Virus record (IMG/VR): IMGVR_UViG_3300045971_000577
Coordinates: 1 to 64,000 of that record
Length of the DNA stretch: 64,000 nucleotides
Direction: 5' to 3' (one strand)
The notes below the pieces were generated by a model. That model did not search any database, was not told where the DNA came from, and worked only from the letters and a program-made list of their open reading frames with translations. The translations under genes and the position numbers were made by a program. Positions 11,560-48,700 of this stretch are shown here, in pieces (positions within the stretch are counted from its first letter, which is position 1; each line of letters opens with the position of its first letter).

Positions 11560-11822
11560 TTAACTCTTTCTTAGTTAGTTTGCAGTTATCGAAATGATAT
11601 CGTTTCATCGGTGATCCGCTACCGACCTTGCCACCCACTTGCCGTTCACTTTGCCACCTTCTTGCGGTTGAAGAACCACGTGACCAGTCCGACCAGCAGT
11701 GCCGCCCAGATGGCATTCTTGATGGGGTCTTTCTTATCAGGAAGGAAGTTCACGATGTGCGCCTTGCTGTGTTTGTTGCGATGTGTGTGTATTATGCAGG
11801 AGTCACCACCTGCTGTCAACTA

Positions 11823-12032
11823 CTATTTGAATAGATCCTGGATGCGTTTCCAGGAGAAGAACTGTTCCACGCCCGCGCCGGTTCCGACAGCACTCAGCGT
11901 TCCTTTGACGCCTTTCTTGCCGACGTTGAGTACCGCACCGGGATTGCCGATGGTAATGCTATTCGGACCACGCTTGCCAACATTCAGCTTGACTGGCCCA
12001 ATCTTGAATACCTTGCGAAACTTGAAGTGCAT
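11823..12032 (-). CDS. DUF4236-like protein
   Basis: FRKVFKIGPVKLNVGKRG..SITIG pattern. Confidence 0.65.
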   Translation of the reverse strand: MHFKFRKVFKIGPVKLNVGKRGPNSITIGNPGAVLNVGKKGVKGTLSAVGTGAGVEQFFSWKRIQDLFK

Positions 12033-19983: not shown

Positions 19984-20676
19984 TTGGTTCTCCAGATATT
20001 TGTTGCAGTGACTAAACTATAACGCAGGGTGGGACCGATGTCAACCGGCCAACTTCTTTATCAGAAGGCCCTGCAAGTCGCCCACCTCATCGTTCTCGAG
20101 ATAGAAATCGGTCTTCGGATCCCAGTACTTGCCTTCCTTGGAATCGTAGTAAAGCACGCGGCCATTGCCAAAGTGGAACGGCCCTTCGAGACCATTGCGC
20201 GGGCCGTACCGTTCATCCCTACTGAAGGTGATGTAGGCCACGTTATCCGCCAGTGGGTTCGTCAGCGTCGGCTTCGTCTTCGTCGGGAGTATCGTCGCCG
20301 GCGTTGGGAATGTAGTCGTTGGAGCGAGCAAACTGCTTCACTTCATCTTCACTCAGGAAGTTCAGCAAGTCGCGGATGACGTTGTCCTTGTCAAGGACGC
20401 CTTGCTCAACCAGGTCGAGCATCTGGCAGGTAACGGGCCTGCTTTTCCTGTGATCAAAACCAAACATGGTCTGTCCTTGTTGTGCGATGTGTGTATTATG
20501 CGCGGACAGATGGAGTCTGTCAACGACTTTTTAGGAATCGCTCACCTTTTAGCTGAAAGATTTCGTGCAAGCGTTCATGCCACACCAGGAACTTTTTCTG
20601 GGTGGGTGTAAGCCCATTCCAGATAGTTTCATCGATGTTGACCGGCCGTACGAGTTCTGATTTCATCTGTTTCTCC

Positions 20677-36149: not shown

Positions 36150-36803
36150 TTATGCTGGTACGAATGTCCAAGCATCAGTAGCCTTACCATAGAAATTCGG
36201 AAACCAGGCGTACGGCATTTCGAAGTATCCTTCGCGGCCCCATGTCGATCCGAATGAGTTCCGGCAGAGTATAGTGTTCGGTGTGAACACATCGTATCCG
36301 CACGCAACAACAGCGTGACCACCGAGCCATTTGTTCGATGTGTTCCACATTGGCAGGAATCCATCGTACTTTGTCCTTGAGACGAATGTATCCGGAACCA
36401 TCAGCGCAAACATCACTGGTAAGCCGAGATCTAACGAAGACTTCATTGCGGCAAGCGACGTTATTGACTGGTACGACTTGATGCGCGACCGGAGCGGTTG
36501 TGCAGTGGCATATGCATTCATATCTGGCTTCATAGTCAACACAGCCGTGCTGTATGGCCAAAACATCTCGCTCGGCGCACCGAACTGAGCGATACCTTTC
36601 ACTGCATTACGTGGTTGGCAACCGAAGTCACCACCTGCTTGATTTGCATACACTCTCGCATTGTAATACACAAACAACCGAGACAGATCGGCTACACCAA
36701 GAACAGCCTCGACCACTGACGTAGCCGCATGGGCGACGCACGAGTTTGGCGCCCCCTGTTGTTCGATTGGACCGAATTTGGAACGAAGATCTACAGAAGC
36801 CAT
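36150..36803 (-). CDS. C1A papain-like cysteine peptidase (catalytic domain)
   Basis: VDLR, QQGAPNSCVAHA, GGHAVVACGY, RNSFGSTWG..GYF. Confidence 0.9.
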   Translation of the reverse strand: MASVDLRSKFGPIEQQGAPNSCVAHAATSVVEAVLGVADLSRLFVYYNARVYANQAGGDFGCQPRNAVKGIAQFGAPSEMFWPYSTAVLTMKPDMNAYATAQPLRSRIKSYQSITSLAAMKSSLDLGLPVMFALMVPDTFVSRTKYDGFLPMWNTSNKWLGGHAVVACGYDVFTPNTILCRNSFGSTWGREGYFEMPYAWFPNFYGKATDAWTFVPA

Positions 36804-36804
36804 T

Positions 36805-36942
36805 TTATTTTTCTCCTGTGAAGATTTGGTCTCGGGCATCAGGTTCATCCTTGATCCAGCCGTTGAAAGTTTGCTCGACCGCATCTTCTGCGATCTTCTT
36901 ACCGAACAGGCTCATAAACCAAGCCACGAATGTTTGCCACAT
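36805..36942 (-). CDS. 45-aa ORF resembling the N-terminal prosegment of bacterial C1A peptidases
   Basis: Hand translation MWQTFVAWFMSLFGKK...GWIKDEPDARDQIFTGEK*. Confidence 0.65.
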   Translation of the reverse strand: MWQTFVAWFMSLFGKKIAEDAVEQTFNGWIKDEPDARDQIFTGEK

Positions 36943-37244: not shown

Positions 37245-37985
37245 TCAGGCCTTGCGAGCACGGCGTGCTGCACCGACACCGACCAGACCGAACAGCGCCA
37301 GTGCAAGGCTCGTTGGTTCCGGCACCAAAGACACGTCGCAACCGTTGAACGTTGAACATCCACCACCGGAGTTGACCGTCGCGGTAATGAAGTCTTGCTT
37401 GCTGGCCTTGCTCAGAGCCGTCGAGTACTCGAAGTCAGACAGGTACGACACGTCGTATAGGCTCGTAGTCACTGCACCATTCTGCAAGAGACCATTTGCA
37501 CGGGCAACCACGTCGGTTCCAGTCACGTTGATCACGTTGAAGTTGCCGGTCGAGACGTCGAGGTCGGTGTCGTACAACGTGTTCCAGATGGCGAGCTGCA
37601 TCGCGGCCGAGCCGGAAGCATCACCGCTGCCAGCGCCATCATTTGCGGTGAACAGCTGACCCATCTTGTCCCACGGGCTCAGTTCTGTGACGTAGTCAGT
37701 CTTGTCGTACTGGACGCCGAGACCTTGACCAGCAGCAGGGCTGTACAAGTCGACGCAGAACATCAGGAACGAGTCAGACGAACCGCTGGCTGGCTGGAAC
37801 GTGGCTTGCATGCCACCGATGTAGATTGCGCCGATGGTGTTCGAACCGACTTGGACGGTACCAGTTACTGTTGGTGAGAACTCGAAGGCACCGCGGGTCA
37901 GTGACCCCGAAGTAACGACTGGTGCAGCAGACGCTGAGAGCGTGGCGACAGCCAGTGCCAGGGAGGTGAGAAGTTTCTTGATCAT
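37245..37985 (-). CDS. PEP-CTERM protein with thioester-domain-like core
   Basis: Signal peptide; FCVDL and MQLAIW motifs; VPEPTSLAL..TM..ARRARK. Confidence 0.88.
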   Translation of the reverse strand: MIKKLLTSLALAVATLSASAAPVVTSGSLTRGAFEFSPTVTGTVQVGSNTIGAIYIGGMQATFQPASGSSDSFLMFCVDLYSPAAGQGLGVQYDKTDYVTELSPWDKMGQLFTANDGAGSGDASGSAAMQLAIWNTLYDTDLDVSTGNFNVINVTGTDVVARANGLLQNGAVTTSLYDVSYLSDFEYSTALSKASKQDFITATVNSGGGCSTFNGCDVSLVPEPTSLALALFGLVGVGAARRARKA

Positions 37986-39789
37986 TGATTGCCCTTTGTT
38001 GGGTTGAGTTTGTCTGTATGACATAATGTGCCTATCACACTACGCCACGTGAACCTTATTATGCATGTTGTAATCTGCTTTGTCAACCGCGCCGGTTAGT
38101 CGGTTGCAAAGTTGATATATTAGTTATCACCTTCACGATAAAATATGCCATTATAATGATCGCAGACCATTATTTGGCCACGGCAGCAATGATCTTGTCG
38201 AAATCTTCCTTCGAGTTGGCCATCGCCAGTTGAGCAAGACCAATGGATAGTTCTTGCATTTCTTCACCGGTTCGGTCGAACGCCTTGGCCAGTTCCGCAA
38301 CAATCTGTCTTTCGGAACTTGTTCCACCACTGGTCCTGAGAATAGTACGGAGACTTTCTGCAAGTTCCAAATTCAATGAACGACTATCGCGCAGACGTTC
38401 GATCGTCTCGACAAAGGTGGTCGGGGCACTCATGACACGCGAAACCTGCCGAGCGAAGCACCACGAATCATACCAGCCATTAGGTAACCCATTTCGCGTG
38501 CAGTGATACGAGTGGAATGAGCAGTCACCGCGCCGCTGCCGTTGAGTTCTTCTTCGAGCTGGTAGCCAAGACTGTTCTTGTCGATACTGAAATGTCCGAT
38601 TGCCATTGGTTCCTGTGAGCGAAGAAGTACGTCATTCAATCTGACGCATTGATCTCGCAAGGTGTATTTGGTGATACGCATCACATTCTGTCCATTGCTG
38701 CGGATTGTTGCTTCAGGTAGCCCTTGATTTCAAAGAGCTCGAGCTGCTTTTCGTGACCGGGAATCTCACCGGTGGCCTTGTTGCGCCATTGGGTGCCGTC
38801 AGCCACGTAGCATTCGACGATCTCGCGCCCGATGTTGGTTGTGCCAGCCTTCAGCATCATAGCCGACCATTCGAAGATGCCGGCTTCACGAGTGATGGTT
38901 ACTTCTTCAAGTCCATCCTCGTTCGAGGTAGCATGGCTGATTGAGTTGTAGTGCTTCACGCCAGTGCCTCCGGGACGTCGTCTTCAAGTCCGTTCACCAA
39001 TGCATCAATGTCAATGCCGGCCACAACTTCGACGGATATAGTCTTCCTGTTCTTGTTCACCGTGTCGATGGTGACAGGACGGTACGGCCACAGTGCGCAG
39101 GTATGTTCGCTGCGGCAGGATTCCACCTGTTCGCGCCACGTGCCGCCGGCCAGCGGGTCGTAGATACAATCCTTGCACTTGTCATTGATGGCTTTGGTTC
39201 GGCTCATGTTTGCTCCTTGATGCTTGTATTATGCGGGATCAGGCGACAAGAGTCAACTGGTGTCTTTCAACGACGCATTATGTAGTTCCACAATGTGGTT
39301 GGCAAGACGGTCACCCACATTGAAAGCAACCGCATTAGGCACGTTGTATATAGTTCGATTGGGTGAAAAGTCAGACCTCATTTCCACTGTGTCAGCAGTG
39401 TAGATTGATCCGTCGACCACCACCCATCGGACTTCAGTTATCTTCACCGGTAGGGATAACACTTCAATGCGCCAGCCGCTGCATTTGTATCAGTGTAGAA
39501 ACCGCGAGCAGACAATGCAGCCCGCATCTTGGTAGGATCGGTACTCGACTTCAACCAAATCCATGCATCCAGATCGCCCCGGGATGCGGCAGACTCAAAA
39601 AACCTCTTCAGACGAGATTCATTTTCTGCCAGGTTGTTGGCGAAATCAGTATCGGTGGCGGCCTTCAGGCCCTGTTGTCGGGTGTACATGATGCGGTCCT
39701 TGTTGCTGTGTGGTATTGTGTAGCATTGTCATGCAAAAGTCGAATGTTATATTTCGGATTGTGAAATATACCACACCTTCTTTGGTGGA

Positions 39790-40083
39790 TTACTTACTGG
39801 GAGCCACCTGGCCGGGAACCCAGTTAGGATCTTTCGGTGCCAACGGTTGATACAGATCCCAACCGATGAAGTAGATCGGCACCACCACGGTCTCGCAGAA
39901 GATGACTGACCAGAAGATGGACCAGCCGGAGATCTCGTATTGGATCGTGGGGTTCTTCATCTCGGATTCGTTGATCAGACCGTAGGTGCCATATTCCACA
40001 CCGTTGATGGTCTTGTTGTCGGCGCCGCAGGCGGTAAGCAACAGAGCGGATGCAAGGACGGCAGCAAAGAGTGAGCGCTTCAT
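39790..40083 (-). CDS. Putative lipoprotein/membrane protein
   Basis: Lipobox LTAC; hydrophobic C-terminus. Confidence 0.75.
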   Translation of the reverse strand: MKRSLFAAVLASALLLTACGADNKTINGVEYGTYGLINESEMKNPTIQYEISGWSIFWSVIFCETVVVPIYFIGWDLYQPLAPKDPNWVPGQVAPSK

Positions 40084-40140
40084 GGGATCTCCTATGTTGA
40101 GCCACTATTGTATGTGCCTTAGAGTAGCAATGCAAGAGGA

Positions 40141-40205
40141 TAAATAAGTGTAGTTCGCGGGATTGCAGTCCCCAACCACTCTAATGCTACAAGGAGCAAT
40201 CAGCT
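40141..40205. promoter_or_regulatory. Late promoter plus two-hairpin leader of a GIY-YIG gene
   Basis: TAAATA; AGTGTAGTT-CGC-GGGA/TCCC-C-AACCACTCT; TGCT/AGCA hairpin over AAGGAG. Confidence 0.75.
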
Positions 40206-40820
40206 ATGTATTTAGCCTATACTTATCTCGTCCGTAATAAGATAACAGGTCAATTCTATTATGGATTCAGATGTAAAAATGTAAAACTAAAAAGACACCC
40301 CGAAGATGATCTATGGGTGAAATATTTTACTTCATCTAAGAAAATTTCTAATCTAATTAAGGAATATGGAAAAGATTCTTTCGAATATATAATATTATCA
40401 ACGGACGTCGATCCCGATAAATGCTACACATTAGAGCAGATACTAATTTCCGAAAATATAAAGAATAAGTTATGCCTTAACGAATGTTGTCGGTTAACCG
40501 GCCGATTTTCAACAGCTGGACGCATTCCCTCCAACGAATCTAGATTAAAATCAAGTAAAACTCAGAAAGGAAGATCTAAGCTGCCCATTACAGAAGTGAC
40601 TAGAGAAAAATTAAGTACATCCACTAAGAATACATTTCTTAAGAACGGCTGTTCTGTTGAAACTAGAATAAAATTATCTCAGGCCACAAGTAAACCAGTA
40701 TGTGTTTTTGGTAACAGATACCTGTCTATGAAAGACGCAATTGATAAATTGAATCTAACTTATTGCATGTTGACCCACAGATTAAGATCTGATAAATTTT
40801 CTGATTGTTATTATCTATAA
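40206..40820 (+). CDS. GIY-YIG (Seg-like) homing endonuclease
   Basis: YTYLVRNKITGQFYYGFR, YFTSS, NUMOD-like tail; AT-rich; opposite strand to its neighbours. Confidence 0.85.
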   Translation: MYLAYTYLVRNKITGQFYYGFRCKNVKLKRHPEDDLWVKYFTSSKKISNLIKEYGKDSFEYIILSTDVDPDKCYTLEQILISENIKNKLCLNECCRLTGRFSTAGRIPSNESRLKSSKTQKGRSKLPITEVTREKLSTSTKNTFLKNGCSVETRIKLSQATSKPVCVFGNRYLSMKDAIDKLNLTYCMLTHRLRSDKFSDCYYL

Positions 40821-40823
40821 GAG

Positions 40824-40843
40824 AAAAGGCTGCCGAAGCAGCC
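40824..40843 (-). terminator. Intrinsic terminator
   Basis: Minus strand GGCTGC-TTCG-GCAGCC-TTTT. Confidence 0.8.
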
Positions 40844-41385
40844 CCTATCGATTTCGATAATAGTTACCGAAGTAACTACTCTCTGATACAACACCTTCTG
40901 CGAGTTTCCTCTCCAGTTTGTATCTTTTTCCCAATTATCTATAATTTAATCATATAATTGCATGTTATCTTGTGGCGCCCACGCCTGCACGATACCAGTG
41001 GCCGGGTTCTTAGGCCCTTGCTAAGTTATTTAGGATAGTTTGAATAAAATCTCCACTGAGGATGAGTCCTCGTTAGTTATTTCACTTCTTTTGTCTTCGT
41101 TTTACGTTTCTTTATCTATAATTTATAAACTATGTTCCATGTAGGCTCTCAATCAGTGGCCATATCCGGTTACACTGTCCTACAGCGGGCTTGGCGTACC
41201 TTCCGACTCTCAAGAGCCATAATCAGCAGCACAATATGGGTCATAGAAAAGAGATTCTACAGTGTTCCCACGCACCGGACTCATCTTCTCTACAAGCTTC
41301 GGGAACCGCGACACGATTCCCGGCAGCTTGCCCATTTCGTTGTAGTGCAACTCTTCAGTTGTGCCTATAACTACTTACTTATGCC
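40824..41385 (-). ncRNA. Candidate ~560-nt structured ncRNA
   Basis: Promoter TTGACA-17-TAAAGT (41416-41388), many stems, UUCG loops, terminator; no credible ORF. Confidence 0.5.
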
Positions 41386-42074
41386 ACACTTTACAGCATG
41401 GGCTAGTATTTGTCAACCCTTCGGTTTATTCCATTATCACTGAAGAATGGAAACTACACGGTTGCTGGGCTATTAGTCCGCTTGATGTGCAGCCCGGAAT
41501 GGGACTCAACCCATGCACCTGCTGTGGCCCGATCGATTTCTCGAACACCCCTCCATGTTTTTCTACCTGTCGGTATATCCTGGGATCCTAACCACTGGAC
41601 AAAGAACACGGACGACCTTCCATCGTCACTTGCCCGCATACTCCAGGAACCCCTAGAGTCTACATCCTGCTTCTTGGGTGGGACAGGACGATACCCTTTC
41701 GGGTAGATAAAGTTATTTATTTCCGTTCCGGTCTCGAACCGGACATCACCTACAACTTGATAGGCACAAGTTGGACACCAAAACATGCTTGCAGGGCCTT
41801 GGATGTCTATCACAACCTTGCATCCCCATTACGAAAACAAACAACATTCAGTTGGACGATCGGTACGTACCGACCACCCATCGATCTTTTTCTTCTTTCT
41901 CCATATGAGCAAAGGCTCTCTTGCTTATGTAGAAGTTCTTCTTGGCCATCTTCGCAATCAGCGTTTTGAGAGACTTCTCCAACTTCTGCCGTTCAGCTTC
42001 GATGGCAAGCTCTTCTTCGCGTGCTTGCACCAGCGCGGTGATCTTATCTTTGCTAAGTTTGATTGCAGTCATAC

Positions 42075-42480
42075 ATTCCCTTGTTGAAAAGCCCCACGGG
42101 GAATCGAAACCCCAATCGCGATGTTAAAAGATCACGACGTCAGCCTTTAGATAAGAAGATGTACAGGCCCCTTACCTATGACGGAAACTTATTGCAACAG
42201 ACTCAAAGGAACTGTCGGCACCAAGGCATTGGTCCACCGATTTCCGATCCGCCTCTTTCAACTGCAATGAAACTTGAATGGACGAGTAATTGCAGATCCT
42301 CTTCCAACCTTGTCAGTCTGTTGCAATAAGTGCCCGAGAAACTTATAGGAACTGGCGTTTAGTGGCAGGATTGCGATTCCCGAAAATCCACTATCCATCT
42401 GCCAATGGACTTGAAAACTTCCCGATGTGCAGCGGCGAAAGTCTTCTCGTCAACCAGTTCGTATAAATCCCTAACGCATG
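42075..42480 (-). ncRNA. Candidate ~400-nt structured ncRNA with tRNA-like 3' part
   Basis: Promoter TTGACA-17-CATAAT (42514-42486); perfect 17-bp inverted repeat; T-arm-like hairpin. Confidence 0.5.
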
Positions 42481-43729
42481 CGACTATTATGCCTAACTGT
42501 TACGGAATTGTCAAGCGGTTATAGGAACCTTATCAGGTCATCACGCAGATCGATGATTTCGTACTCGATACTATTCGCTAGACCAGCCATCACCTGTGAA
42601 TCGGTGACGGCACCGGTTTGAGGATTGATCATCTGCTTTAACATCTTCAGCCTACGTTCGATAGCCTCGATGTGATACAATGCAGACGAAGCAGCTTCGA
42701 AGTTATCTTTTGCCACAGTTATCTCACAGATGAAAGTATGCAACGATCAAGTTCACCACAGGAATCAACGGAACAATGATAAGTCCCACGACAATTTCCT
42801 TAGTGGTGTATGGATAGCGTTTCCTATAGTCGAGCCACTCAATAAACAGTATGCCGAATGAAACGACGACGGTAACTGCATAGACTGCACAAAGGATAGG
42901 AATGAGCATGATTACCTCAGGTAGTGGATGTTTTCGATGATTGCATCCTTCTGTTCCCTAGAAAGAGTTGCAAAAACATCCTGTGCAACGCCGCGGCGAT
43001 ATATTCTGGCTTCCTGATCAATCTTCATATCACGAAGCTTACGCTCCAGATATTCGAGTTCCCACGATTCTGTCTGGTAGGTCAGCGTGTCATCAATGAC
43101 GGCGGCATCGTCGTAGAAGTGAACGGATGGTCCGGTTGCAGTCAGACTGACATTCACAGCGACACCAATACTTTGCGCCAATGCCTGTGCATCCATCAAC
43201 CGCTTGGGGACAGTCAGCAGATAGGCTTCCAATGCTGCTTCGGCAACAGCCTGCTCTCGAGCTTCACGGAGAATCTTTTCATCTTTTGTTTCACGAGCCA
43301 TTTTTCTTTCCCTTTGTGCGTTCACGTGGCCAGTAGCCTTCGGCCAGATCATCCGTGATTGAATCCATGAACTTTTCCAGTGCTGCCTTGTTACGATGAA
43401 CACACTGGAAGAAATGCTTCTGATCACTGTCAGACAACCGCGTCACTATGGTGTGCAGCCCGTCTTCTTTCAGTTCCACCGTGTATGTGAACTTAGTCAT
43501 CAACATTTGTCGCTCCAGCTATACAGAAATGCCCACGAACCTGTTCCATCTCTCTGGTCAAACGTGCCGCGATAGACCGTGTAGTGTACGCTGAACCCTA
43601 CAGCAATGCAAACCCCTCTTGCTCCGCATAAATCCGCGGTTGCTTCGGGCAAGGCTTCGTAGTATTGCCTGCCTATACCAGGCGTCGACAATGGCGGGAT
43701 AAGTCGATAGCCATTGATGGTAGTTTGCA

Positions 43730-44389
43730 TCAATCTCTCACTGGGTAGCGCGTGAACATGATCTTACCCTCATTCATTTCTTGTTTCAGCCGTTTACGCT
43801 TCCATCCGACCTTCTGCAGCCATGTGTCAATTTTTCTTGAGAACGCGTCGGCAGAAACTTTCATTGCCCACTCGTTTAGTTTGAGTTCTATTACTTCCGG
43901 TGCAAGAGGATTTTCCTGGGCAGCAAGCATTTCCATTACTTTTCTGCGGGTATCGGGTGTCATCTTATTTACAAATCGTTTCACATTCACTTGATGTCCT
44001 TCGACCGAACCCTTCCTGCTATTGCAAGGAGAACACAGAACCTGCGTGTTGGAAAGATTGTTTGCTCCGCCCAGACCACGTGCAAGTATATGGTCACAGG
44101 TCAGCAACACTTCCTGTCCGTCGGCATCCAGCGCATACAGATTCAGGTGGGTGTACTGTGTTTGATTACGAAACGAATCGATGGAAAAGAATGCACCCTG
44201 TAACCCACAATGGGCACAGAAGAGCTTTCCGTGATCTCGCCCGAAAGTCTTTAGCCGTAGAGAACTCACTCCCACCTCGAATCCGTGCAACTGCACCTTT
44301 GTATCTTCGTAGTTCCAGCTGGACTTTATATGCCATACCACTTCGTCAACTGGAACTATTGTTCGTCTGAGATAGTTATTCATATGCAC
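43730..44389 (-). CDS. HNH endonuclease
   Basis: CAHC..LTCDHILARGLGG.N..SN.Q.LC..CN..KG. Confidence 0.88.
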   Translation of the reverse strand: MHMNNYLRRTIVPVDEVVWHIKSSWNYEDTKVQLHGFEVGVSSLRLKTFGRDHGKLFCAHCGLQGAFFSIDSFRNQTQYTHLNLYALDADGQEVLLTCDHILARGLGGANNLSNTQVLCSPCNSRKGSVEGHQVNVKRFVNKMTPDTRRKVMEMLAAQENPLAPEVIELKLNEWAMKVSADAFSRKIDTWLQKVGWKRKRLKQEMNEGKIMFTRYPVRD

Positions 44390-44425: not shown

Positions 44426-44611
44426 TTATTTCGGTCTATGGGCGTTATCCCATTCTTTGCGAGTCCATCCATTCATAAACAACTGCTCACGCCAGGTAGT
44501 TCGGTTTGGATCAACTAGGCCCATGTGTCGCCGGAAGAGTGTTTCCATCTCTTCCAATGATTTCCTCGTAAGACGGCGAAAGGTGTCATCTTCCGTATGA
44601 AAGGTGTTCAT
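44426..44611 (-). CDS. TEDDT family protein
   Basis: MNTFHTEDDTFRRL..LF..NGW. Confidence 0.75.
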   Translation of the reverse strand: MNTFHTEDDTFRRLTRKSLEEMETLFRRHMGLVDPNRTTWREQLFMNGWTRKEWDNAHRPK

Positions 44612-44952
44612 GGCAGCCTACGAAGTTTCTCCGCGAGTACCAGTTGAAGAATTTCGTTAGCGAAATCGTCCTCGCCTTGCAGCAGCGCCTGCGCTCCGAT
44701 CTTGCGAAGTTCTTCAATCAGCCGGTGAACAGGTTCGCCGACATCGACCTTCTCACTACGAAGGATACGGCATTGTTCGTCAAACACCGTGTCCGTACAC
44801 GGTTGTAGATCGAACGTTTGCGGGACGCCCGCGATCTCGGATGCGTCCTTGGCTTCCTTAAGGCCTAACCCTGTGAGCATGCGGATAGCTTTGATGACCG
44901 AGACCTTGTTGTAATAGATCAAGGGACAGGTAAAGGTGATTTTCTTATTCAT
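44608..44952 (-). CDS. Protein with ribosomal L7/L12 C-terminal-like domain
   Basis: NKVSVIKAIRMLTGLGLKEAKD. Confidence 0.8.
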   Translation of the reverse strand: MNKKITFTCPLIYYNKVSVIKAIRMLTGLGLKEAKDASEIAGVPQTFDLQPCTDTVFDEQCRILRSEKVDVGEPVHRLIEELRKIGAQALLQGEDDFANEILQLVLAEKLRRLP

Positions 44953-44975
44953 GCGTGTATTGTATATGATTTAGT

Positions 44976-45026
44976 TGACAGTCGCGAGCGGTAGTGATCT
45001 TTTGTCCGACATACCCTCCACTGTCA
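44976..45026 (-). ncRNA. Solitary copy of the array module
   Basis: Minus strand TGACAGT-G-GAG...CTC-GCG-ACTGTCA; TGC-GAAA-GCA hairpin upstream. Confidence 0.7.
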
Positions 45027-45113
45027 TTGGTTTGGTTTTTACGGGTTATAGGATGCTTTCGCAGACGCCCTTTTGCCTCGCCCCAATGGAACTAGCTGCC
45101 GACCTTCCCAACT

Positions 45114-45317: not shown

Positions 45318-45820
45318 ATCAGAATGTCCTTATGTCCAACATTGCTTCGGGCACGATGCTGGTGTCGAAACAATATGCATTCCACATCAGTTGATACTTG
45401 TCGACAGTTTCGCCCGGTTTCATCTGGAAGCCAAGGATCCAATAGTCGCCAAAGTATTCGAGGCCGAGATCAATCTCGTTTAGCTGATCGTCTTCGTACA
45501 TATCGAGGCAGAAAGTAACCGCTTCCTCGCGATCAGTGAAAACAATGCCAAACGCAAGGAGTGGAATTCTATATGTGCTCACATCAATCCCGAAGTCTGA
45601 TGCCAGCCGCGGCCAGATCGAAGTCAGCAGGGAAGGTCAGCGTAGCAGCCGGCGAGCCTTCATTGGTCCAGTAATGCTGATGCCCGTTATCTTCATCAAG
45701 CATTTCGTCGACTGTGTCCCTTGATCGGAACCAGTGGATAGACGAACTGCCATCGCCGCCGTCGGAAATCAATGCATAAACCGTTTGTGTCTTTGCCATA
45801 TCTACCTTTCTATGTTATGA

Positions 45821-45843
45821 TGGTGCCCGGAGGGGGACTCGAA
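45821..45843 (-). other. 23-nt tRNA 3'-end fragment
   Basis: TTCGAGTCCCCCTCCGGGCACCA immediately 3' of tRNA-Leu. Confidence 0.8.
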
Positions 45844-45928
45844 TGGTGCGAGCAGAGGGATTCGAACCCTCAATCCTTGCGGCGGGGGATTTTAAGTCCC
45901 CAATGTATCCCAGTTCCATCATGCTCGC
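45844..45928 (-). tRNA. tRNA-Leu(UAA)
   Basis: GCGAGCA/TGCTCGC acceptor, GGGGA-CTTAAAA-TCCCC, long variable arm, GGTTCGAATCC, CCA. Confidence 0.92.
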
Positions 45929-47107
45929 ATTATCTACCAATTCCATCATCCGGGCTGTTACTATCCACGTTCCTTTAGTATTGCTTCTTCGTAGCCAGCT
46001 TCGCTACCAGCTTCGTACGCTTCTTCCCAAATCAACTCAGCAAATCGCTTGAGGTTGAACTGGGAAAATGTGTAGGGTTTTCCGTCCAAGTCGATAGCAG
46101 GCACTGCAACATGCGCCATTTTGTGGAACCGCTCGAAGTCTTCTTGTTTCATGCTGTCAACCCTAGGCGAGCCCTGATTAGTTCTTCAGCACCTTTCGTC
46201 TTGCCTAATGCATCAGTGGCGCAGGCGCTGATGCACTCTTCCATGATGAGTTTGGCAAACTGTTCCATACCGATCGGATAGATATATCCGCCTCGCACGT
46301 CAGCTGCCTCAGCCAATCCGGCCCTTTCTGCAAGCTCTTTGATCTTGTTCATAGCGTTACGTTGGGTAGACCATGTTCTGCATTCGTCTTCTTGCAGAGC
46401 TCGATTACCTCTTCCTTAGTTGAGTGACGAGTGCGGACGCCCTGGAACATCATGTAATGTTCTACTTCGCAGCCGCGGTGTTGAATCCAGCAGTAGTATG
46501 CTGAAGTATATTTCTGTTCCATTATTTCCACTTGTCGACAAATATCTGTTCGTCGATTTCGTCAGCAAACCAAAACTCTGTACCATCGCCCCACCATTTG
46601 GGAATGGTCCTGGATTGTTTGCCGTCTTTCATAACTCCGCCCATACCTTGTGCGCGGAGCCATTTATTTCTTGCTGTGCGCCATTCGGCAACGGGTGCAT
46701 CGACAACGCCGGAGTTCGGCTCGAACCACTCAATTGCGTTACCGACGATGACGTTGGAGACTGTCATCGCTTGTAGGTCACCAGCCATTTGATTGCGAAG
46801 TGCAACATGGAGCCAATGGTGATGACGCTCGCGATTGGGGCAAAGAGCGCCATGATGACCACCATACCGACAGGACTGTCATCTCTTGGCATGGCGTACC
46901 TGGCAAGCAGGATTGCCTGCACAAGAGCATAGAGAATGTAGAGTACAATTTCCATTATGTTCTTTCTAAAAGCGGTGGTAGCGGATTCGAACCGCTGGAC
47001 GGCTGAGTAAAGGTACGCAATTACCACTCGTCCGCTCTATCTTGCGTTCAACAATAAGCCACTCTGTCAACCACCTGCCGCACTGCCTTCACACGTCAAC
47101 TACTATG

Positions 47108-47686
47108 TTATAGTCTTGCGACAACTTTGTCAACAGGCTTATAGAACTTGTGATTGCCTATTTCCACAGTGTGCGTGAACATCTTTGCCCAGCGTGGAGT
47201 CCTATAACCCTTTATCTTCATCACCTTAGGTGCAAGATAGCTGATGCTGCCCTTGGTCGGATCAGTGATAACTTTTTCCAGCACCAGTCGCGCAACCTGA
47301 AGCGACTGTTGCCAGCTTGCTTTATCGATCTCGTTCCGTTGAGCTGGTTCCAGATGTAAGCTCGTAGCCGCCGCCTTTAGTGCAACGTTGCCATTGAAGG
47401 CACTGTATTGCATAGGCGCAAGCACCTGCTTACATACCGTGGATTTAGGCGAATTTAGCGCCCTATTGACCGCTGTGTGTGCAACAGCGGCCATGCCCTC
47501 TATTGTCTCCCCTCTGCTTTCTCCGTACACCATAACCGCCAGACATTTGACTTGGGCAGGTTCTGCAACGATAGGTTCTTCAAAGGGTAGATCACGAATG
47601 CACGCCATCTGTGCAGCATTGTGAATGGATGTAGGGACTAAGGCAAGAGCCAGAAGTATGTATCGCATAAGAGTATTATGCAACAC
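47108..47686 (-). CDS. SleB/CwlJ-like cell wall hydrolase
   Basis: CLAVMVYGESRGE..AVA...NR, QYSAF, IGNHKFY. Confidence 0.88.
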   Translation of the reverse strand: MLHNTLMRYILLALALVPTSIHNAAQMACIRDLPFEEPIVAEPAQVKCLAVMVYGESRGETIEGMAAVAHTAVNRALNSPKSTVCKQVLAPMQYSAFNGNVALKAAATSLHLEPAQRNEIDKASWQQSLQVARLVLEKVITDPTKGSISYLAPKVMKIKGYRTPRWAKMFTHTVEIGNHKFYKPVDKVVARL

Positions 47687-47699
47687 AAGATATAAACAG

Positions 47700-48700
47700 T
47701 CAACAGATAAATGATAGTCGCGGAGCAGGGCCCTATAGTTTTGCCGGCCGGTCTAGTTACACAGGATAATCCCACTATCAGTAAATGGTTCTGAGTTTCC
47801 CCTCACACTCACCTTTTGACAATCACGATGAGTAGCGAGCGCCCCGACTGAACAGGCAGATATATTCATCCATAGTCATTCTATAGCTTGGATGACTATA
47901 GAAATATTTCCAAAGACTGGAGGTAGGTGCTGGCTGTCGCAGGCGTACATTAGTTCAAGCATGACTAAGACGCATACTTTCGAGCCTTCGGAAAATAGTT
48001 GGTAGTCACGGATAGCGGGACGTCTCAAGTGTAGACGAAAGCATATACCACTACCAGTATAAAATGATTATCAGTCCACTACTCTGAGTTCACATATTTA
48101 CACCTTCAACATAGCTGGCAGTCGCGATTAGAGAATAGATTAGTGCGTTAGTTCCGCCATTCATCAAATGATACTTCCACTGCCTGTACTGTTCCTTCGT
48201 ATTCTCATACAAGGGAACAGCACCAGTTGGCTACAAGAAGAATACGTCGCCTTTCGGTCGACTGGCTCCACCTCGCATAACTATTGTGGTAAGCATTCTT
48301 GTAACAAATAGTCGATGGTCGCGACGGAAGTGATCAATACCCCTGCCTGCAGACAGTTTGATATCAATATACCATCCACTATCCGTCCTCAGATCATTCC
48401 TCGGACCTTATCAAAAATGGTAATCACGGAGTAGAGAATCACTCAACGGGACAGGCTCCACCGGTCAGACCGGACTGCCGTCTGCAATCATGCTCCTATT
48501 ACCTGTGCTTGGAGAAGGCACCTTACTGCATTGACAGTCACGAATACAGTATACGGTTGGTGCCTTTCGACCATCTCCGACCGCAATGTATTCCACTATC
48601 TGTACGGGTTCGTCACTCCGCACCTTTTTCCTAATGAACTGTTCAACCGCATACCAGCGTGAGATACCTTTCGGTAGAGCGCTGGAATAGCCTGTTCCTC
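47700..48700 (-). ncRNA. Tandem array of seven conserved structured RNA modules
   Basis: Units at 47712-47780, 47817-47878, 48000-48056, 48116-48185, 48313-48384, 48418-48504, 48532-48601, with covarying stems. Confidence 0.75.

What the first reader, a model, noticed from the sequence alone, without database searches (positions are those of the whole stretch)
40141..40205. Minimal copy of the array module is the leader of a GIY-YIG endonuclease
Seen on the minus strand: TGCT-CCTTGT-AGCA-TT-AGAGTGGTT-G-GGGA-CTGCAA-TCCC-GCG-AACTACACT-TATTTA. This has the same G/GCG 1x3 loop and hairpin order as the 47.7-48.7 kb units. On the plus strand the element follows TAAATA and hides the RBS. Inference: the module travels with, or regulates, this mobile nuclease. 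The array may titrate the factor that binds it, or supply RNAs to the nuclease.
Basis: partly seen in the sequence, partly recalled or inferred. Interest (0 to 1): 0.65.

Follow-up and report, generated by a model that had tools for sequence, protein, structure and literature searches.

The report
Portable leader of phage homing-endonuclease genes
The 65 bases upstream of this GIY-YIG nuclease gene are a real, widely conserved expression leader (late promoter plus two RNA hairpins) that travels with homing-endonuclease genes in T4-like phages, but they are not a demonstrable copy of the nearby hairpin array.

Summary
The link to the 47.7-48.7 kb array is not supported. A covariance model of six array units scores the element 11.5 bits (E 0.68 per window). 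A model of the element's own family scores it 48.8 bits (E 8e-14) and finds no array unit.

The same leader precedes two paralogous GIY-YIG genes in this 369-kb T4-like phage. Its core also occurs in at least 120 IMG/VR stretches, upstream of GIY-YIG and HNH nuclease genes.

On the gene's strand the leader reads, in order:
- GATAAATA, which is this phage's own gene-upstream motif and resembles a T4 late promoter.
- Hairpin P1, with an almost invariant CGC/C internal loop and covarying stems.
- Hairpin P2, which holds the Shine-Dalgarno sequence.
- CAGC, then AUG.
- UAUUUA, kept in all three reading frames.

The most likely function is late-phase expression control of mobile nuclease cassettes, as known for I-TevI, mobE and segB. 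This particular motif is absent from Rfam, from GenBank phage records and from the searchable literature.

The parts
40139..40146 (+). GATAAATA, a T4-type late-promoter-like octamer; 5' boundary of the conserved cassette
   Evidence: Similarity among the three genomic copies starts abruptly here. VATAAATA is this phage's own upstream motif: 76 of 129 copies are intergenic, and 74 lie within 100 nt upstream of a gene on the same strand. G occupies position -1 in 45 of 53 instances that also have an SD and a start codon. The genome encodes a T4 Gp23-type capsid protein. Metagenome contigs diverge at 40139-40141.
40146..40183 (+). Hairpin P1: outer stem AGUGUAGUU/AACCACUCU, internal loop CGC/C, inner stem GGGA/UCCC, loop UUGCAG
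   Evidence: Model R2 scores it 48.8 bits, E 8e-14. The inner stem covaries: 78 cells changed on both sides against 21.5 expected, with 0 of 500 shuffles reaching that. The outer stem covaries in divergent members, e.g. AUGGUU/AACCAU and GUCCUU/AAGGAC. The 161825 copy has GAUG/CAUC instead of GGGA/UCCC.
40184..40198 (+). Hairpin P2 (AUGCU / AGCAA with loop ACAAGG) carrying the Shine-Dalgarno AAGGAG
   Evidence: In the family, the 5 nt after UCUA pair with the 5 nt before CAGC. That gives 318 paired cells against 268.5 +/- 4.1 in shuffles. Mutual-information pairs: 58/77 GC 72 and AU 28; 59/76 CG 74 and UA 20.
40199..40214 (+). UCAGCU, the AUG start codon, then UAUUUA (the complement of UAAAUA)
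   Evidence: CAGC and TATTTA are at least 90% conserved in 116 leaders. TATTTA lies 0, 1 or 2 nt after the start codon, so in all three reading frames: 17, 18 and 68 cases.
40206..40820 (+). GIY-YIG homing-endonuclease gene (204 aa), AT-rich, opposite in orientation to its neighbours
   Evidence: Pfam SegE_GIY-YIG at 1e-6. GC is 31-37% against about 50% around it. tblastn relatives are annotated as NUMOD3 or homing endonuclease. Paralogues are 44-48% identical.
40825..40846 (-). Minus-strand terminator-like hairpin just beyond the nuclease gene's 3' end
   Evidence: The consensus scan finds a 9-bp stem, a UUCG loop and a U-rich tail. Function is inferred only.

Best explanation
The element is the 5' leader of a mobile homing-endonuclease cassette and belongs to a widespread leader family of T4-like phages. 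Shown: its architecture on the gene's strand is GATAAATA, then hairpin P1 with a conserved CGC/C internal loop, then UCUAA, then hairpin P2 holding the Shine-Dalgarno sequence, then CAGC, AUG and UAUUUA. Also shown: it is attached to GIY-YIG and to HNH nuclease genes in many phages. Inferred: GATAAATA is a gp55-type late promoter. Transcripts would then start at or near the base of P1, which becomes a 5'-terminal hairpin serving as a stabiliser and/or a protein-binding site. P2 would tune ribosome access to the SD. In transcripts that read through from upstream, UAAAUA could pair with UAUUUA next to the AUG and close the initiation region. The nuclease would then be made late, as for T4 gene e, I-TevI, mobE and segB. 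The very high DNA identity of the leader across unrelated nuclease genes also suggests that it serves as a homology handle for exchanging cassettes.
For: Three genomic copies share a sharp 5' boundary at TAAATA, while their proteins are only 44-48% identical. The core occurs in at least 120 IMG/VR stretches. R2 scores the window copy 48.8 bits and the other two copies 52.3 and 46.5 bits. Both P1 stems and P2 covary. Of 96 downstream ORFs, Pfam matches NUMOD3 in 30, HNH in 12, HNH_3 in 8, HNH_5 in 5, SegE_GIY-YIG in 5 and I-TevI_DNA-bd in 4. Divergent leaders sit 40-95 nt upstream of 17 or more of 52 GIY-YIG relatives, always on the gene's strand. GATAAATA is enriched upstream of this phage's genes, and the phages encode T4 Gp23. 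TATTTA is kept in all three frames. The T4 precedent, a late promoter that encodes the 5' strand of an inhibitory structure and is also used by homing endonucleases, is reviewed in PMC3014915. The leader's orientation follows the nuclease gene rather than the neighbouring genes: the upstream neighbour is opposite in 43 loci and the same in 24.
Against: No transcript data exist, because no RNA run holds the region. Start sites and timing are therefore inferred. The UAAAUA:UAUUUA helix is weak in thermodynamic models: mean probability 0.25, median 0.03, with no change in SD/AUG accessibility. It shows no covariation beyond the invariant hexamers. In this genome all three cassettes are antiparallel to their neighbours, so sense read-through may not occur here. 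Neither the promoter idea nor the occlusion idea explains why the CGC/C loop is invariant. A-C mismatches on the sense strand would be G-U on the antisense strand; they occur in two of this genome's copies and in some divergent members. The acting strand of P1 is therefore not proven.
Confidence: 0.62

Rival explanations
1. One reading: the element is a minimal copy of the hairpin units of the 47.7-48.7 kb array. The two would bind the same factor, or the array would titrate that factor or feed RNAs to the nuclease.
For: Read on the minus strand, both have U-G-G...C-GYG-A, a 1x3 internal loop closed by U-A and G-C pairs. The array model aligns the element with all 10 modelled pairs intact at 11.5 bits, the fourth-best match outside the units used to build the model. 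The same model gives 15.5 bits antisense to another leader. Divergent leaders have CAC instead of CGC, which mirrors GYG.
Against: E is 0.68 per window, which extrapolates to about 4 per genome. A generic scan for this loop geometry finds about 4-6 unrelated hits per strand in the genome. The leader model finds no array unit. The array's conserved UGNNAGU/ACUNNCA letters and its 30-50 nt interior are absent from the element. The array units lack GATAAATA at the right spacing, UCUAA, P2, the SD, the AUG and UAUUUA (read). No array units occur in 834 kb around other leaders. The leader's orientation follows the gene, so it is opposite in sense to the array in this genome.
Confidence: 0.07
2. The conservation is mainly at the DNA level. 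The leader would be a recombination handle or cassette boundary, a late-promoter counterpart of the PeSL promoter-stem-loop cassettes, kept uniform by gene conversion and not needed as RNA.
For: The homology boundary at TAAATA is abrupt. Metagenome contigs share the leader and diverge at 40139-41, at 40183-87 or at 40266. The same leader sits on unrelated nuclease families. PeSL cassettes are a precedent in T4-like phages (PMC2839356 and PMC4122927).
Against: Compensatory changes keep P1 and P2 paired, which points to selection on structure and not only on identity. The SD, AUG and promoter positions show an expression function. The two roles do not exclude each other.
Confidence: 0.2
3. The element acts on the minus strand. 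It would be a terminator, insulator or antisense RNA for the flanking minus-strand genes.
For: On the minus strand the hairpin is followed by UUAUUUAUCC. Two copies in this genome have G-U on the minus strand where the plus strand has A-C. Cassettes lie antiparallel to the upstream neighbour more often than parallel, 43 against 24.
Against: 24 loci have the leader parallel to the neighbour. G-U pairs on the sense strand also occur, 16 cells. P2, the SD, CAGC-AUG and the promoter are features of the sense strand. The terminator scan did not call it.
Confidence: 0.08

Closest known systems
Late-promoter and RNA-structure control of T4-family genes: gene e lysozyme, I-TevI/II/III, Aeh1 mobE, T4 segB (reviewed in PMC3014915)
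   Same: A TATAAATA-type late promoter lies directly upstream of a nuclease gene. Hairpins involve the SD or the initiation region. The promoter's complement lies next to the AUG. The setting is homing endonucleases in a T4-like phage.
   Different: Here the leader is one conserved sequence family, shared by GIY-YIG and HNH genes across many uncultured phages. It has an extra promoter-proximal hairpin P1 with a near-invariant CGC/C loop that the known mechanism does not require. The occluding helix would be only 6-7 A-U pairs and is predicted to be weak. There is no experimental evidence.
PeSL / PmSL mobile regulatory cassettes of T4-like phages (Arbiol et al. 2010, PMC2839356; Comeau et al. 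2014, PMC4122927)
   Same: Short repeated promoter-plus-stem-loop modules flank variable genes, and they were proposed to mediate modular shuffling.
   Different: PeSLs pair a terminator-like stem-loop with an early sigma-70 promoter or a middle Mot-type promoter, and their sequences are specific to each phage pair. This leader has a late-type promoter, two hairpins, the SD and the first codons, is tied to nuclease genes, and is nearly identical across many phages.
The hairpin array of this window (units at 48607-48526, 48390-48307, 48191-48110, 48062-47994, 47786-47706 and 45032-44970, minus strand)
   Same: The same 1x3 G/GYG loop geometry when the leader is read antisense, and the same genome.
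   Different: Different conserved stem letters, a 30-50 nt interior against 14, tandem arrangement among tRNA genes, and no ORF, SD or promoter context. The models do not cross-recognise the two.

Membership tests
Array module of 47.7-48.7 kb (model R1) | Significant score against a covariance model built from the six clear units | tested here: not met
   11.5 bits, E 0.68 for the window; the units themselves score 50-72 bits.
Array module of 47.7-48.7 kb (model R1) | Conserved basal stem UGNNAGU / ACUNNCA flanked by UACWG and ACUA | tested here: not met
   The element has AGAGUGGUU / AACUACACU; only the U-A pair next to the loop matches.
Array module of 47.7-48.7 kb (model R1) | 1x3 internal loop G / GYG closed by a G-C pair | tested here: met
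   G / GCG with a G-C closing pair on the minus strand. The same geometry occurs about 4-6 times per strand by chance in the genome.
Array module of 47.7-48.7 kb (model R1) | Reciprocal recognition: the element's own family model finds the array units | tested here: not met
   R2 gives no match in 44.9-48.7 kb on either strand at E up to 10. The model penalises long insertions, so this evidence is weaker than the forward test.
Homing-endonuclease leader family (model R2; defined here) | P1 hairpin with GUGUAGUU-CGC-G...C-C-AACUAC core | tested here: met
   48.8 bits, E 8e-14, against a model that excludes this genome's copies.
Homing-endonuclease leader family (model R2; defined here) | NATAAATA 1-3 nt upstream of P1; UCUAA; P2 with the SD; CAGC; start codon; UAUUUA within 0-2 nt | tested here: met
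   All are present at 40139-40214 and align column for column with 113 other leaders.
Homing-endonuclease leader family (model R2; defined here) | Directly upstream of, and on the same strand as, a free-standing nuclease ORF | tested here: met
   GIY-YIG ORF at 40206. Across the family the ORFs are of GIY-YIG/NUMOD3 and HNH types.
T4-type late-promoter / RBS-occlusion leaders (gene e, I-TevI, mobE) | Functional gp55-type late promoter TATAAATA upstream | tested here: inconclusive
   GATAAATA is enriched upstream of this phage's genes, and the phage has T4 Gp23. No gp55 homologue was sought and no transcript ends are available.
T4-type late-promoter / RBS-occlusion leaders (gene e, I-TevI, mobE) | An inhibitory helix whose 5' strand is missing from late transcripts and which sequesters the SD or AUG | tested here: inconclusive
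   The UAAAUA/UAUUUA complement is conserved in three frames. However, its predicted pairing probability averages 0.25 with no effect on accessibility, and there is no covariation.
T4-type late-promoter / RBS-occlusion leaders (gene e, I-TevI, mobE) | Translation delayed to the late phase of infection | not testable with these tools
   Needs infection time courses or reporter assays.
Any Rfam family | Match to a curated covariance model | tested here: not met
   No match at the element at E up to 5, and none in two other leader loci at E up to 1.

The most novel reading that the evidence does not exclude
The near-invariant CGC/C loop of P1 is the docking site of a dedicated phage or host factor that co-regulates all nuclease cassettes of a genome, a 'homing-endonuclease regulon'. 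The array of hairpins with the mirror-image G/GYG loop among the tRNA genes would then be a decoy or sponge for that factor, or an antisense partner of the leaders. That would give the host phage a way to restrain its selfish nucleases.
Probability: 0.07. Interest if true: 0.8.

Novelty: new variant of a known kind. Interest (0 to 1): 0.55.

Why it matters
Free-standing homing endonucleases are major drivers of mosaicism in T4-like phages, but only a handful of their control regions have been studied, one gene at a time. This is a single, sharply bounded leader of about 75 nt. It is shared by at least two unrelated nuclease superfamilies across well over a hundred uncultured phage contigs, and covariation supports two RNA hairpins in it. 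That suggests the nuclease bodies are swapped behind a common expression module. It also gives a compact motif for finding such cassettes in metagenomes, and it points to an unexplained conserved internal loop that may bind a factor.

Tried and rejected
- Folding energies of the element alone were not informative: z = -0.99 and -0.49.
- Megablast of 39-43 kb against GenBank phages found nothing. blastn of a consensus-like leader against the same collection also found nothing.
- I looked for close relatives of the phage through the cell-wall hydrolase at 47108-47686 and found none in IMG/VR. No empty-site allele could therefore be compared.
- Laying metagenome contigs in search of a cassette-free relative showed that the roughly 90%-identical wastewater relative also carries the nuclease here.
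- A pseudoknot between the P1 loop (YUGG) and the conserved UCAGC was considered. Mutual information shows no such coupling.
- A second, antisense late promoter formed by TATTTA was considered. The flanking-base preferences differ from those of the sense promoter, and this reading is not needed.
- The literature search for the core sequence returned only unrelated primer hits.
- The identity of the array was explored with Rfam at E up to 5, by comparing it from memory with tRNA, Y RNA, K-turn and ribozyme motifs, and by folding. No assignment was reached.
- The fragments flanking tRNA-Leu do not form a tRNA when joined.

Full report
**Observation**

The window is the first 64 kb of a 369,145-bp virus record with direct terminal repeats. 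The next base starts a 204-aa ORF on the plus strand (40206-40820), and Pfam assigns it to SegE_GIY-YIG at 1e-6. Its relatives in GenBank phages are annotated as NUMOD3 or homing endonucleases.

The gene is AT-rich, 31-37% GC against about 50% around it, and it points against its neighbours. Folding energy of the element alone is unremarkable on either strand: z = -0.99 on the minus strand and -0.49 on the plus strand.

The array is real. AGTGG-N20-50-CGYGACT occurs six times on the minus strand of the genome and never on the plus strand, and five of the six lie in 44.9-48.6 kb. The units share UGNNAGU-G-G...C-GYG-ACUNNCA, with compensatory changes at the NN positions.

I built a covariance model, R1, from six units.
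- R1 scores its own units at 50-72 bits and one further degenerate unit at 20.7 bits.
- It scores the element at 40143-40186 (minus) at 11.5 bits, E 0.68 for the window.
- A generic scan for this loop geometry finds four to six unrelated instances per strand in the genome.

**What the element is**

The generic scan also turned up near-identical copies at 81865-81894 and 161769-161798. Both lie upstream of plus-strand GIY-YIG paralogues, with ATGs at 81920 and 161825. These proteins are only 44-48% identical to the window's protein, yet the leader and the first 80 coding bases are about 80% identical at the DNA level. The similarity begins abruptly at TAAATA. One copy has the inner stem GAUG/CAUC where the others have GGGA/UCCC.

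Aligning 116 leaders gives this architecture on the gene's strand:
- NATAAATA or CTAAATA, followed by 1 or 3 nt.
- Hairpin P1, with outer stem GUAGUU/AACUAC, internal loop CGC/C and a variable inner stem.
- UCUAA.
- Hairpin P2, whose loop and 3' strand hold AAGGAG.
- (A)UCAGC(A), then the start codon.
- UAUUUA, 0-2 nt after the start codon.

**Support for the two hairpins**

The P1 inner stem covaries strongly. 78 cells are changed on both sides against 21.5 expected, and 0 of 500 shuffles reach that value. A model of P1, called R2, was built from 67 distinct IMG/VR copies and excludes this genome.
- R2 scores the window element at 48.8 bits, E 8e-14, on the plus strand.
- It scores the two other genomic copies at 52.3 and 46.5 bits.
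- It scores no array unit at E up to 10.
- Three more distant GIY-YIG paralogues in the genome lack the leader.

R2 also finds divergent leaders 40-95 nt upstream of 17 or more of 52 distant GIY-YIG relatives, always on the gene's strand. In these the outer stem has changed compensatorily (AUGGUU/AACCAU, GUCCUU/AAGGAC, GUAGGU/ACCUAC), while the loop stays CGC or CAC.

P2 covaries as well. It shows 318 paired cells against 268.5 +/- 4.1 in shuffles, and the mutual-information pairs are GC/AU and CG/UA.

**Association with nucleases**

96 complete ORFs behind leaders were scanned against Pfam. The matches were NUMOD3 in 30, HNH in 12, HNH_3 in 8, HNH_5 in 5, SegE_GIY-YIG in 5, I-TevI DNA-binding in 4 and GIY-YIG in 3. 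The same leader therefore serves at least two unrelated nuclease superfamilies.

UAUUUA follows the start codon at offsets 0, 1 and 2, in 17, 18 and 68 cases. It is thus conserved as nucleotides, not as codons.

The orientation of the leader follows the nuclease gene and not the neighbouring genes. The upstream neighbour is on the opposite strand in 43 loci, the same strand in 24, and unclear in 22.

In pond and wastewater metagenomes, several contigs share the leader and diverge at 40139-41, at 40183-87 or at 40266. This independently shows a repeated module with sharp edges.

**Mechanism**

This genome and three of four large leader-bearing contigs encode a T4 Gp23-type capsid protein, with E from 1e-78 to 1e-98. 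In this genome, 76 of 129 VATAAATA copies are intergenic, while only about 13% of the genome is intergenic. 74 of them lie within 100 nt upstream of a same-strand gene. G occupies position -1 in 45 of 53 instances, a median of 27 nt before the start codon.

GATAAATA is therefore very probably the phage's late promoter, by analogy with T4 TATAAATA; this is an inference. If transcription starts about six bases downstream, as in T4 (established knowledge, not tested here), late transcripts would begin at or near the foot of P1.

In T4 gene e, I-TevI, mobE and segB, the late promoter encodes the 5' strand of a structure that blocks the initiation region in read-through transcripts (PMC3014915). 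The conserved UAAAUA...UAUUUA complement fits that design. The evidence for it is weak, though.
- The helix has a mean predicted probability of only 0.25 and does not change SD or AUG accessibility in the model.
- It shows no covariation.
- In this genome the cassettes are antiparallel to their neighbours, so sense read-through may be rare.

The invariant CGC/C loop remains unexplained. A protein-binding or stabilising role for P1 is inference only.

**Comparison with what is known, and novelty**

The kind of control is known: a late promoter plus RNA structure in front of homing endonucleases. So are PeSL/PmSL promoter-stem-loop cassettes as shuffling modules (PMC2839356 and PMC4122927).

This specific leader has no Rfam match, no match in 50,697 GenBank phage records and no hit for its core sequence in the searchable literature. 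I therefore rate it a new variant of a known kind.

**Verdict**

'Leader that travels with the nuclease' is supported and much extended. 'Copy of the array module' is not supported. The array itself remains unexplained and deserves its own follow-up. No RNA data were available, so promoter use, the acting strand of P1 and timing are untested.

Noticed in passing
window 47706-48607 and 44970-45032, minus strand: Tandem array of about seven hairpin units (plus one isolated unit) with a conserved base, UACWG-UGNNAGU-G-G...C-GYG-ACUNNCA-ACUA, and variable 30-50 nt interiors. It lies among tRNA genes with no ORF. There is no Rfam match at E up to 5. Weaker units lie at 48412-48510 (20.7 bits) and 47811-47884 (11.8 bits). 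Its function is unknown.
   Followed up: partly
window 45815-45960, minus strand: The tRNA-Leu(UAA) gene (45844-45928) is flanked by fragments that look like the 5' end (GCCCGGAUGAUGGAAUUGGUAGAU) and the 3' end (UUCGAGUCCCCCUCCGGGCACCA) of another tRNA. Joining the flanks gives no tRNA by ARAGORN.
   Followed up: partly
window about 46975-47045 and 42070-42125, minus strand: tRNA-like pieces, with T-arm GGUUCGAAUCC or GGGGUUUCGAUUCCCC and acceptor-like ends. ARAGORN and Rfam do not call them; they may be decayed tRNA genes.
   Followed up: partly
whole window, minus strand, e.g. 105-112, 671-678, 1405-1412, 11817-11824, 20521-20528, 47068-47104: Recurrent early-promoter-like motif AGTGGTTGAC-N17-CATAA(T) in front of minus-strand genes. 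Its AGTGG part overlaps the array's conserved word, which could confuse motif searches.
   Followed up: no
window 43730-44389, minus strand: A second free-standing nuclease gene (HNH / HNH_5, about 1e-7) in the tRNA region, without the leader described here.
   Followed up: partly
G000:C1 21122-21544 (-), 124052-124321 (-), 238862-239035 (+): Three more distant GIY-YIG-like paralogues in the genome that lack the leader.
   Followed up: partly
window 37245-38024 (-), 36150-36884 (-), 44608-44952 (-): Phage-encoded proteins: one with a PEP-CTERM sorting signal, one papain-family protease, and a small protein with a ribosomal L7/L12 C-terminal-like segment. The PEP-CTERM motif hints at the kind of host.
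   Followed up: no
window 38000-43000 in runs X3, X4, X6: A phage about 90% identical in wastewater metagenomes carries the same lipoprotein-like gene, leader and nuclease, but differs by a 1612-base replacement (537 other letters) between 41294 and 42907.
   Followed up: no
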